This document shows, piece by piece, positions 32,017 through 33,889 of a stretch of DNA of 44,369 bases. Below the pieces are notes generated by a model that did not search any database, had not been told where the DNA came from, and saw only the letters and a list, made by a program, of their open reading frames with translations. The stretch spans positions 1 to 44,369 of the forward strand of contig NW_021834675.1 in assembly GCF_006345805.1 (NCBI RefSeq). Direction: 5' to 3'. Origin of the DNA: Octopus sinensis (taxonomy: Eukaryota). Position 1 is the stretch's first letter, and the number at the start of each line of letters is the position of its first letter. A program made the position numbers and the translations under genes.

Positions 32017-32047
32017 ATAGGAAAAAAGCAACAAGAATGGATTAAAA

Positions 32048-32134
32048 TCTCGGTACGATCGTTTCGTACGAGGACTCTTTAATAAGCTACAAAAAATGCA
32101 GTGAATACAGATGGCTCGTACTCGTCAGCCGAAA
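32048..32134 (-). ncRNA. Type I hammerhead ribozyme (copy 1)
   Basis: Minus strand: UUUCGG-CUGACGA-GUACGAG...CUCGUAC-GAAA-CGAUCG-UA^-CCGAGA. Confidence 0.88.
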
Positions 32135-32419
32135 AAATATCAGAGAATCCCAAACATCAAAAGGGGTAGATATTATGGAGGGGGATGTCTTAGGGGAAAA
32201 CTCGAAGTTTATTTTTTCCATTCTTGCTGAAAAGTTAAGGACCGGAAAAACTACAGATAGTATGGGAATATATTCAGTTAAGTAATTGAGATTCTAGTGA
32301 TTCTAAGAATTCACATGAATATGGTCTTAACTAGGATGCACCGGATATCTATATGGTGTTAGCCATACGACAAGTGGGGTGATTATAAATAGGAAAAAAG
32401 CAACAAGAATGGATTAAAA

Positions 32420-32507
32420 TCTCGGTACGATCGTTTCGTACGAGGACATCTTTAATAAGCTACAAAAAATGCAGTGAATACAGATGGCTCGTACTCGTCA
32501 GCCGAAA
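32420..32507 (-). ncRNA. Type I hammerhead ribozyme (copy 2)
   Basis: Same motif; predicted cut between 32426 and 32425. Confidence 0.9.
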
Positions 32508-32814
32508 AAATATCAGAGAATTCCCAAACATCAAAAGGGGTAGATATTATGGAGGGGGATGTCTTTAGGGGAAAACTCGAAGTTTATTTTTTCCATATCC
32601 GGTGCATCCTAGTTAAGGACCATATTCATGTGAATTCTTTAGAATTCACTAGAATCTCAATTACTTAACTGAATATATTCCCATACTATCTGTATGTTTT
32701 TCCGGTCCTTAACTTTTCAGCAAGAATGGAAAAAATAAACTTCGAGTTTTCCCCTAAAGACATCCCCCTCCATAATATCTACCCCTTTTGATGTTTGGGA
32801 ATTCTCTGATATTT

Positions 32815-32902
32815 TTTCGGCTGACGAGTACGAGCCATCTGTATTCACTGCATTTTTTGTAGCTTATTAAAGATGTCCTCGTACGAAACGATCGTACCGA
32901 GA
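32815..32902 (+). ncRNA. Type I hammerhead ribozyme (copy 3, inverted arm)
   Basis: Stem I tttcgg (32815-20)/ccgaga (32897-902); CTGACGA 32821-27; stem II GTACGAG/CTCGTAC; GAAA 32885-88; palindromic stem III ACGATCGT; GUA cut after 32896. Confidence 0.9.
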
Positions 32903-33889
32903 TTTTAATCCATTCTTGTTGCTTTTTTCCTATTTATAATCACCCCACTTGTCGTATGGCTAACACCATATAGATATCCGGTGCATCCTAGTTAAGGACC
33001 ATATTCATGTGAATTCTTTAGAATTCACTAGAATCTCAATTACTTAACTGTATATATATATATATATATATACACACATCATTAATCTATGAATAGATTC
33101 AGTAACAGTTAACTGGGAAAGAGACAAAACAGTGTTGTTTCCTCTTTGATGGAGGTAGTACAGGTGGTGGTGTTGCCTAGGACAAGATATGTTGCTATGG
33201 GTTTAATTCCAGATGTTGACAAGAACTGACTATTGCGTTCTGTTTCAAGAACAGATAGAAAAATAAACACCATCACATTTTAGAATATTAAATGAAGTTT
33301 TGAAGTGGTAAGAATTTACTTGGCGATGGAGCTTTGCAATATCTGCTTAGCGGTGTCAAAGATATTCAGGTGTACTTTCAGTTTTGTGAGTTATGTAAAT
33401 TCTGATTATTTCACCTGTTCATCATGTGCATTTGTTAAAGTATTTGCTATTCTCTACAATGTTCGTAGTTGTGTAGTTTGTAAATATGCCATCTGCTTAT
33501 CTTCTGCATTAGTCATCAAGCCCGGAGAGTGTTCTGAGTGTTAAGAGCTCGAAATAATTCACATATTTCTTGCACGTACATACATCTACTAGAACCTATA
33601 CACATACGGAGAGTCATTGGAGTTTACTCAAGAGGATGACTACGTTAGATAGACAAGGGCGTTCAAGAGAGTTTCTGAGAAGAAAGTGGGTAGGTGGCTC
33701 TATGCAAATTCGATTAATCAGAAGGCAACTAAATACTCACAACAGAATCGTAGATTTTCAAGTTCTTAAAATTATTTTGAAACATGTCAGTTGTTTGTAA
33801 TTTTGTATGCCGATTTCTTCAACTTCTGACTGGTTAAAGATGACAACAACTCATCCATCAGCTATCAAGCCTGGAGAGGGACTCATTCT

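What the first reader, a model, noticed from the sequence alone, without database searches (positions are those of the whole stretch)
32017..33050. Tandem 379-nt non-coding unit with three canonical-core hammerhead ribozymes (retrozyme-like system)
Seen: each unit has a complete type I hammerhead: 6-bp stem I, CUGACGA, 7-bp stem II with an extended loop, GAAA, palindromic stem III ACGAUCGU and a GUA site. Two copies are in tandem on the minus strand, so one transcript would be cut at 32426/32425 and 32054/32053, releasing a monomer of 372 nt as assembled (379 nt nominal). Established: hammerhead cleavage leaves 5'-OH and 2',3'-cyclic-phosphate ends that can be circularised; palindromic stem III hammerheads of Penelope type can act as dimers; animal retrozymes are tandem units of a few hundred nt that yield circular RNAs. 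Inference: a young, possibly active retrozyme or pseudo-LTR family producing circRNA of about 380 nt. I cannot tell whether it has been described in this species.
Basis: partly seen in the sequence, partly recalled or inferred. Interest (0 to 1): 0.85.

Follow-up and report, generated by a model that had tools for sequence, protein, structure and literature searches.

The report
Hammerhead retrozyme insertion in octopus DNA
A short non-coding repeat carrying three intact self-cleaving hammerhead ribozymes sits in a TA microsatellite of an octopus-like genome; it is a new example of a known class of animal mobile element (retrozymes, derived from Penelope-like elements), and its layout looks like one recent Penelope-type insertion.

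Summary
Three complete type I hammerhead motifs lie at 32048-32134(-), 32420-32507(-) and 32815-32902(+). They sit inside a 379-nt unit with no ORF and 36% GC. A structural descriptor finds exactly these three sites in the window and none in 200 shuffles.

It is not a plain tandem. Two arms, each longer than one unit (1.55 units on the minus strand, 1.2 on the plus strand), are joined head-to-head at 32595/32596 through a 2-nt microhomology. Their outer (3') ends run into (TA)n on both sides, at UA-rich patches of the unit. A partial tandem, an inverted 5'-truncated copy and a (TA)n target are the published signature of Penelope-like element (PLE) integration.

Both arms read straight through the ribozyme cleavage junction with no ORF between units. 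The template was therefore a multimeric or circular ORF-less RNA, that is, a retrozyme, and not a truncated autonomous PLE.

The arms show no substitutions, so the insertion is young. Seven single-base deletions cluster in the outermost 300 nt and are probably consensus errors.

Copy number, transcription, cleavage and circle formation could not be tested. No other copy was found in the window or in the searchable collections. Verdict: a real feature and a new member of a known kind.

The parts
31991..32019 (.). Left flanking (AT)n microsatellite, one half of the presumed (TA)n target
   Evidence: Sequence read; Tandem Repeats Finder row 31991-32019
32020..32596 (-). Minus-strand arm, 577 nt = 1.55 units. 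In unit numbering from the cleavage site it covers 209->379, one full unit, then 1->34. Its 3' end abuts (TA)n
32048..32134 (-). Hammerhead A (stem I to stem I). Predicted cleavage between 32054 and 32053. Carries a 1-nt deletion in the loop II extension
32054..32425 (-). Monomer that double self-cleavage of a minus-strand transcript would release. It is 372 nt as assembled, against 379 nt in the undeleted copies
32069..32326 (-). Stretch holding all 7 single-base deletions and no substitutions relative to the other copies
   Evidence: the 100% identical inverted arms stop at 32326
32420..32507 (-). Hammerhead B. Predicted cleavage between 32426 and 32425
32595..32596 (.). Head-to-head junction of the two arms (their 5' ends). 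The 2 nt 'AT' are shared by both arms (microhomology). It is not a fold-back palindrome, because the arms start at different unit phases (78 and 209)
32595..33050 (+). Plus-strand arm, 456 nt = 1.2 units of 379 nt (unit positions 78->379, then 1->154). Its 3' end abuts (TA)n
32815..32902 (+). Hammerhead C, identical to B. Predicted cleavage between 32896 and 32897
33051..33072 (.). Right flanking (TA)11 microsatellite, the other half of the presumed target

Best explanation
The locus is one recent insertion of an ORF-less, hammerhead-bearing 379-nt element into a (TA)n microsatellite of an octopod-type genome. The element is an animal 'non-LTR retrozyme', a non-autonomous relative of PLE pseudo-LTRs. 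The insertion was made by the reverse transcriptase/GIY-YIG endonuclease of a PLE supplied in trans.

Inferred sequence of events:
1. The endonuclease cut both strands of the (TA)n tract.
2. Each exposed 3' end primed reverse transcription at a UA-rich patch of the element RNA (unit positions ~35-41 and ~155-161).
3. Each cDNA ran for more than one unit on a multimeric or circular template: 577 nt on one strand and 456 nt on the other.
4. The two cDNA ends were joined through a 2-nt microhomology. This gave two 5'-truncated arms head-to-head, with both 3' ends facing outward.

What the locus can do now. A minus-strand transcript crossing 32507->32048 carries two hammerheads 372 nt apart. [quoted passage not shown] The plus arm has one ribozyme and can only be cut once. 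A transcript across the whole locus would instead fold into a long hairpin.

Shown here: the ribozyme motif, the unit, the architecture and the flanks. Inferred: the PLE enzyme, two-strand priming, the nature of the template, transcription, cleavage and circularisation.
For: Ribozyme: (full core, three helices, 0 hits in shuffles).

Unit:
- No reading frame longer than 59 aa in a concatemer.
- GC 36%, no Pol III A or B boxes, and eight T-runs in the sense strand.
- Circular fold of -94.3 kcal/mol against -57.7 +/- 5.2 for shuffles, z = -7.1. The hammerhead stems I and II appear in the minimum-energy fold.

Architecture:
- Arms and phases.
- 271 nt at 100% identity between arms.
- No substitutions anywhere between copies.
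- Both arms read through the GUA|C junction directly into the next unit.

3' ends: both arms end where the next 7 unit bases match (TA)n at 6 of 7. Only 9 of 379 positions have that property, so both by chance is about 6e-4. This test was chosen post hoc.

Literature:
- PLE insertions are partial tandems, often with an inverted 5'-truncated copy at the 5' end, and (TA)n is a preferred target (PMC8557442).
- A purified PLE protein nicks and extends both DNA strands, prefers AT-rich DNA and initiates internally on the RNA (PMC11167929).
- PLE-type hammerheads have a 7-8 bp helix II and are found as opposite-strand pairs 100-700 bp apart (PMC4209133).
- Animal retrozymes are 150-450 bp low-GC tandem units. 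Mussel units are 350-390 bp (PMC7229834), and the cloned mussel retrozyme's helix III is ACGCGCGU (its supplement).
- Retrozymes are proposed to be PLE derivatives (bioRxiv 10.64898/2026.07.22.740005).

PLEs in the host lineage:
- A decayed GIY-YIG remnant at 7835-8890 hits a PF01541 protein at E = 1.5e-28.
- O. vulgaris is reported to hold 31 families in the Penelope-like row of the paper's TE table, which I read as the putatively active elements (PMC13282606).
Against: - Only one locus was seen. No second copy exists in the window, and none was found in two metagenome scans or the protein collection. A 'family' and mobility therefore rest on architecture alone.
- No PLE ORF is adjacent, and the GIY-YIG remnant 24 kb away shares no sequence with the unit.
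- No target-site duplication can be read in a microsatellite.
- The published 30-40 bp PLE 'tail' is not recognisable. The two 3' ends differ by 120 nt of unit sequence.
- The purified PLE initiated at sites without homology to the target, whereas here both ends show microhomology.
- The hammerhead scores below Rfam's gathering threshold. The catalytically competent fold is 4.4 kcal/mol less stable than a competing fold.
- The three identical copies give no covariation support.
- The 7 clustered deletions show that the assembly is not error-free here.
Confidence: 0.68

Rival explanations
1. This is an ordinary 5'-truncated copy, or solo pseudo-LTR, of an autonomous PLE. The 379-nt sequence is simply the terminal repeat of a full element present elsewhere, and the short tandems arose locally (slippage or unequal crossing-over) after insertion.
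For: Most PLE insertions are 5'-truncated and keep only a terminal repeat, which can later amplify locally (bioRxiv 10.64898/2026.07.22.740005). The hammerhead has the long helix II typical of PLE ribozymes. The inverted plus (TA)n signature is that of PLEs.
Against: Both arms independently exceed one unit and read unit-to-unit across the cleavage junction with no ORF sequence. Two independent local duplications with zero substitutions, in two arms that start at different phases, are less parsimonious than a multimeric or circular ORF-less template. No RT or endonuclease coding sequence lies in or next to the locus.
Confidence: 0.15
2. Part of the structure is an assembly artefact. The inverted duplication and/or the third copy come from chimeric or collapsed long reads, and the real locus is a simple one- or two-unit repeat.
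For: PLE-type tandem and inverted structures are known to trouble assemblies (PMC8557442). The arms are 100% identical over 271 nt. Seven deletions with no substitutions cluster in 32069-32326. The chance that all 7 fall in about 313 of 1033 nt is about 2e-4 by my calculation from the and 53 coordinates. That pattern is typical of unpolished long-read consensus.
Against: The junction is not a fold-back palindrome. The arms start at unit positions 78 and 209 and share only 2 nt. Both outer ends run into (TA)n with different unique sequence beyond. The ribozyme and the unit exist whatever the copy arrangement.
Confidence: 0.1
3. The element is a hammerhead-bearing satellite or a SINE-like Pol III repeat (newt satellite 2, cave-cricket pDo500 or Schistosoma Sm-alpha type), maintained by array dynamics or Pol III transcription and not by PLE-mediated retrotransposition.
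For: These classical repeats are also ~330-500 nt units with type I hammerheads and a short palindromic helix III (PMC7229834; PMC4209133).
Against: Only 2.75 units are present, split into two opposite orientations, which is not an array. There are no A or B boxes, and eight T4-6 runs in the sense strand would terminate Pol III. The newt satellites are themselves now classed as retrozymes.
Confidence: 0.05

Closest known systems
Metazoan non-LTR retrozymes (Cervera and de la Pena 2020, PMC7229834), in particular the Mytilus galloprovincialis retrozyme of 350-390 bp
   Same: - Non-coding, low-GC unit of a few hundred nt (379 nt here) with one type I hammerhead per unit.
- Present at more than unit length.
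- Helix III is an 8-nt palindrome of the same layout (ACGAUCGU here, ACGCGCGU in mussel).
- The predicted monomer RNA is highly structured.
- The host is a mollusc.
   Different: - No detectable sequence similarity outside the core.
- Helix II is 7 bp with a 43-nt extension, against 4 bp plus a small loop in mussel.
- Only 1.55 + 1.2 units are seen, not long arrays.
- Copy number and circRNA expression are unknown.
- No hammerhead or retrozyme report for cephalopods turned up in the searchable literature.
Penelope-like element pseudo-LTRs with minimal hammerheads (Cervera and de la Pena 2014, PMC4209133; Craig et al. 2021, PMC8557442; Frangieh et al. 2024, PMC11167929)
   Same: - Long helix II (7-8 bp) and a palindromic helix III.
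- Opposite-strand ribozyme pairs a few hundred bp apart.
- Insertion as a partial tandem plus an inverted 5'-truncated copy.
- A (TA)n / AT-rich target.
   Different: - No RT-GIY-YIG ORF is attached.
- The repeat period is 379 nt, not several kb.
- There is no unpaired nucleotide between A9 and G10.1.
- Stem I is a full 6 bp.
- No recognisable 30-40 bp tail.
- Both 3' ends show microhomology to the target.
L1 'twin priming' inversions
   Same: The topology matches. Two cDNAs are primed from the two target strands and joined by microhomology, giving an inverted 5'-truncated segment next to a direct one.
   Different: The enzyme class differs (GIY-YIG/telomerase-like RT against APE/LINE RT). Here both arms exceed unit length, which needs a multimeric or circular template.
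Plant LTR retrozymes (Cervera et al. 2016, PMC4918200)
   Same: Non-autonomous retroelements whose hammerheads excise a monomer that is circularised.
   Different: Plant elements have type III hammerheads inside LTRs, a primer binding site, a polypurine tract and 4-bp target-site duplications, and are mobilised by Gypsy elements. The octopod unit has a type I hammerhead and no LTR; a primer binding site and polypurine tract were not searched for.

Membership tests
Hammerhead ribozyme, type I (Rfam RF00163) | Conserved core CUGANGA / GAAA / cleavage triplet ending in H17 (not G) | tested here: met
   CUGACGA, GAAA and GUA followed by C, in all three copies
Hammerhead ribozyme, type I (Rfam RF00163) | Three helices around the core, helix I open, G10.1-C11.1 closing helix II | tested here: met
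   Stem I 6 bp, stem II 7 bp starting G-C, helix III A-U and C-G plus a GAUC loop. 0 descriptor hits in 200 shuffles
Hammerhead ribozyme, type I (Rfam RF00163) | Score at or above Rfam's gathering threshold (34 bits) | tested here: not met
   21.4-21.5 bits, although the alignment is end to end. The 47-nt loop II insertion is penalised
Hammerhead ribozyme, type I (Rfam RF00163) | Compensatory changes in the helices across homologues | not testable with these tools
   The three copies are identical in the ribozyme apart from one deletion. No homologue was found elsewhere
Hammerhead ribozyme, type I (Rfam RF00163) | Self-cleavage | not testable with these tools
   Needs in vitro transcription. 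The active fold is 4.4 kcal/mol above the minimum-energy fold
Metazoan non-LTR retrozyme | Short (150-450 bp) non-coding, low-GC unit with a type I hammerhead and no LTR | tested here: met
   379 nt, GC 36%, longest frame 59 aa. Definition from PMC7229834. The primer binding site and polypurine tract, which the definition also excludes, were not searched for
Metazoan non-LTR retrozyme | Head-to-tail tandem copies, so that two ribozymes flank a monomer | tested here: met
   The minus arm holds two ribozymes 372 nt apart. The plus arm shows the 379-nt period
Metazoan non-LTR retrozyme | Multicopy, dispersed family in the genome | not testable with these tools
   One locus in the window. No eukaryotic genome collection was available. 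Metagenome and protein searches were empty
Metazoan non-LTR retrozyme | Expressed as linear and circular monomer RNAs | not testable with these tools
   No transcriptome access
Metazoan non-LTR retrozyme | Coexistence with autonomous PLEs in the same genome | tested here: inconclusive
   A decayed GIY-YIG remnant lies in the window. PLE families are reported in O. vulgaris. The species of the window is not known exactly
Penelope-like element (copy or pseudo-LTR) | RT plus GIY-YIG ORF belonging to the same element | tested here: not met
   No ORF in or beside the locus. The remnant at 7835-8890 shares no sequence with the unit
Penelope-like element (copy or pseudo-LTR) | Insertion signature: partial tandem, inverted 5'-truncated copy at the 5' end, (TA)n or AT-rich target | tested here: met
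   searches compared with PMC8557442 and PMC11167929
Penelope-like element (copy or pseudo-LTR) | 30-40 bp 'tail' at one end | tested here: inconclusive
   The arms end at unit positions 34 and 154. No 30-40 nt offset can be defined from a single locus
Hammerhead satellite / Sm-alpha-type SINE | Long homogeneous array, or an internal Pol III promoter | tested here: not met
   2.75 units in two orientations. No A or B box, and many T-runs

The most novel reading that the evidence does not exclude
This may be the first described cephalopod retrozyme, caught as a very recent insertion. Both target strands primed reverse transcription, by microhomology between (TA)n and UA-rich patches of the RNA, and each cDNA ran more than once around a circular 379-nt template. 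If other copies show the same pattern, the locus type would give direct genomic evidence for two ideas that are still hypotheses in the literature. One is that retrozyme circRNAs are copied by rolling-circle reverse transcription. The other is that PLE enzymes mobilise them. It would also point to a currently active PLE/retrozyme pair in octopods.
Probability: 0.3. Interest if true: 0.55.

Novelty: new member of a known kind. Interest (0 to 1): 0.38.

Why it matters
Hammerhead-bearing tandem repeats are now understood as retrozymes that yield abundant small circular RNAs. Their link to Penelope-like elements is argued mainly from co-occurrence and sequence relatedness.

A young ORF-less copy that carries the full PLE insertion signature is the kind of locus that can test that link genome-wide. 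The signature here is a partial tandem, an inverted truncated partner and a TA-microsatellite target. The test needs only sequence data.

For octopus genomics, it flags a repeat class (self-cleaving, possibly circRNA-producing) that the repeat annotation I could read does not mention.

It does not change the known picture of how such elements work.

Tried and rejected
- **Rfam at gathering level, whole window:** no hit.
- **Rfam at E-value level, whole window:** only microsatellite-driven microRNA look-alikes, and no further hammerhead.
- **MIR821 'hits' at 32496-32826:** rejected as an artefact. They are the long hairpin formed by the inverted arms.
- **Other copies of the unit in the window (blastn, word size 7):** none.
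- **Six-frame pieces of the unit against 5.8 billion proteins, to reach Logan or transcriptome contigs:** nothing.
- **Two exact-pattern scans of metagenome contigs:** nothing.
- **The last protein search, used on the PLE remnant:** it returned only one 661-nt ENA contig, so no octopus PLE with its pseudo-LTR could be fetched for comparison.
- **Similarity to the cloned mussel retrozyme Mg353:** none.
- **RNAcofold of two ribozyme segments:** it did not recover the textbook dimeric helix III fold. Thermodynamic prediction is uninformative here.
- **A looser core scan:** 9 hits against 4.1 expected. The ones at 16589-16646 and 9428-9470 lack proper helices or the GAAAY box and were rejected as chance.
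- **Pol III promoter boxes and tRNA genes:** none.
- **Fold-back read artefact:** considered and rejected for the junction, because the arms start at different unit phases.

Full report
**1. What is in the sequence**

The window is eukaryotic, AT-rich and packed with microsatellites. A gag-like CCHC ORF at 5314-6135(-) has a single database relative, Octopus sinensis LOC115225585 (62% identity, E = 1.3e-82). The source is therefore most likely an octopod. The exact species is not established.

**2. The ribozyme**

An exact pattern search finds CTGACGA...GAAACGATCGTA at 32054-32128(-), 32426-32501(-) and 32821-32896(+), with 0.00 expected. A structural descriptor of my own required the core, stem II of at least 4 bp, helix III and stem I of at least 5 bp. 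It returns only these three sites in 44 kb and none in 200 local-composition shuffles.

Pair by pair:
- Stem I has six pairs, one of them G-U.
- Stem II has seven Watson-Crick pairs and opens with the conserved G10.1-C11.1.
- Helix III is A15.1-U16.1 and C15.2-G16.2 capped by GAUC, which is the self-complementary octamer ACGAUCGU.
- The cleavage triplet is GUA followed by C.

Rfam's Hammerhead_1 model aligns end to end (positions 1-45 of 45) to all three copies. It scores only 21.4-21.5 bits against a gathering score of 34, because loop II carries a 47-nt insertion. Nothing passes at gathering level.

The insertion folds as an extension of helix II. The catalytically competent fold is 4.4 kcal/mol above the minimum-energy fold, in which ACGA of the core pairs with UCGU of helix III.

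The three ribozymes are copies of one sequence. They count as one independent occurrence and offer no covariation.

**3. The unit**

The period is 379 nt (32595-32678 repeated at 32974-33057).
- A concatemer has no frame longer than 59 aa.
- GC is 36%.
- There are no Pol III A or B boxes, and eight runs of four to six T in the sense strand argue against Pol III transcription.
- As a circle the RNA folds to -94.3 kcal/mol, against -57.7 +/- 5.2 for dinucleotide shuffles (z = -7.1). Hammerhead stems I and II are present in the minimum-energy fold.

**4.

I number the unit from the cleavage site. The plus arm 32595-33050 covers positions 78->379 and then 1->154 (1.2 units). The minus arm 32596->32020 covers 209->379, one whole unit, and then 1->34 (1.55 units).

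The arms are joined head-to-head (5' end to 5' end) at 32595/32596 and share the dinucleotide AT. Because they start at different phases, this is not a fold-back palindrome.

Both 3' ends face outward and run into (TA)n: 31991-32019 on the left and 33051-33072 on the right. Both ends fall exactly where the next seven unit bases match (TA)n at 6 of 7. Only 9 of 379 positions have that property, so the joint chance is about 6e-4. This test was chosen post hoc.

The arms are 100% identical over 271 nt. Across all copies there is no substitution. The only differences are seven single-base deletions, all within 32069-32326. Five are homopolymer contractions, and all lie in the outermost third of the minus arm. 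I take them as probable consensus errors, but this is unverified.

No other copy of the unit exists in the window.

**5. How it most likely arose and works**

The published signature of PLE integration is a partial tandem, often with an inverted 5'-truncated copy at the 5' end and with (TA)n as a preferred target (PMC8557442). A purified PLE protein nicks and extends both DNA strands, prefers AT-rich DNA and initiates reverse transcription internally on its RNA (PMC11167929). PLE-associated hammerheads have a 7-8 bp helix II and occur as opposite-strand pairs 100-700 bp apart (PMC4209133). The locus matches all of these.

In both arms, unit follows unit directly across the GUA|C junction with no coding sequence between them. 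The template was therefore a multimeric or circular ORF-less RNA and not a several-kb PLE transcript. That is the definition of an animal non-LTR retrozyme: 150-450 bp, low GC, a type I hammerhead, tandem copies and no LTR (PMC7229834). Retrozymes have been proposed to be mobilised by, and derived from, PLEs.

I therefore read the locus as a single, recent, two-strand-primed insertion of a retrozyme into a TA microsatellite.

Consequences for function:
- The minus arm can yield a 372/379-nt monomer by double self-cleavage. [quoted passage not shown]
- The plus arm can only be cut once.
- A read-through transcript of the whole locus would form a long hairpin, which is what produced the spurious MIR821 hits.

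Dimer dependence is not a given. A helix III of two pairs plus a tetraloop is the invertebrate type. The mussel retrozyme, whose helix III has the same layout, cleaves as a monomer at about 0.1 per minute. PLE-type ribozymes with long helix II are weak in vitro, and one needed its protein.

**6. What could not be tested**

Copy number, association with an ORF elsewhere, transcription, cleavage and circles all remain open. No eukaryotic genome collection was available.
- Translating the unit in six frames and searching the protein collection gave nothing.
- Two metagenome scans gave nothing.
- The PLE-remnant search returned one short contig only.

**7. Comparison and novelty**

The nearest described things are the mussel retrozyme and PLE pseudo-LTR hammerheads.
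- The mussel retrozyme has the same size class and the same helix III layout. It shows no sequence similarity outside the core.
- PLE pseudo-LTR hammerheads share the helix II length and the insertion signature, but here there is no ORF.
- I found no report of hammerheads or retrozymes in cephalopods in the searchable literature.
- PLEs are annotated in O. vulgaris, and a decayed GIY-YIG remnant lies at 7835-8890 in this window.

It is a new member of a known kind and not a new system. Its particular value is the clean insertion architecture.

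Noticed in passing
window 7835-8890 (+): A decayed C-terminal fragment of a PLE-type ORF. It has a CxxC-type linker and a GIY-YIG endonuclease motif with a frameshift. It is split by a SINE-like insertion at 8171-8597 and lies just downstream of a 350-bp (TA)n (7388-7737). A patched translation hits a PF01541 GIY-YIG protein at E = 1.5e-28. 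Pfam on the raw pieces was negative. It shares no sequence with the 379-nt unit.
   Followed up: partly
window 5314-6135 (-): A 272-aa gag-like ORF with a CCHC zinc knuckle. Its only relative is Octopus sinensis LOC115225585 (62% identity). This is the basis for calling the window octopod.
   Followed up: partly
window 1553-1968, 2249-2662, 4452-4757, 8171-8597, 9627-9993, 16090-16600, 26010-26159: A SINE-like repeat of about 430 bp, present at least seven times at 75-93% identity. ARAGORN finds no intact tRNA in the window.
   Followed up: partly
window 32069-32326: Seven single-base deletions and no substitutions are confined to the outermost part of the minus arm. The other two copies are identical to each other. 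This looks like unpolished long-read consensus, but it is unverified.
   Followed up: partly
window 12798-13654 (-), 19330-19554 (-), 28302-28898 (-): Stop-free stretches that read like fragments of LINE reverse transcriptases (for example ...GILQGDTLAPF..., ...RWAGHVARL...). Pfam gave no hit at E <= 0.01.
   Followed up: no
window 16589-16646 (+): CTGATGAG...CGAAAC core-like string next to a SINE copy. No acceptable helices I-III could be drawn, and the loose pattern gives 9 hits against about 4 expected. It is probably chance.
   Followed up: yes
window 26494-26839; 33886-40190: Very long microsatellites: (CTAT)86, and a 6-kb stretch dominated by trinucleotide arrays (TTC, TTA, AAG, AAT, TGA, ATC). 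These create long spurious ORFs and many false microRNA hits in Rfam.
   Followed up: no
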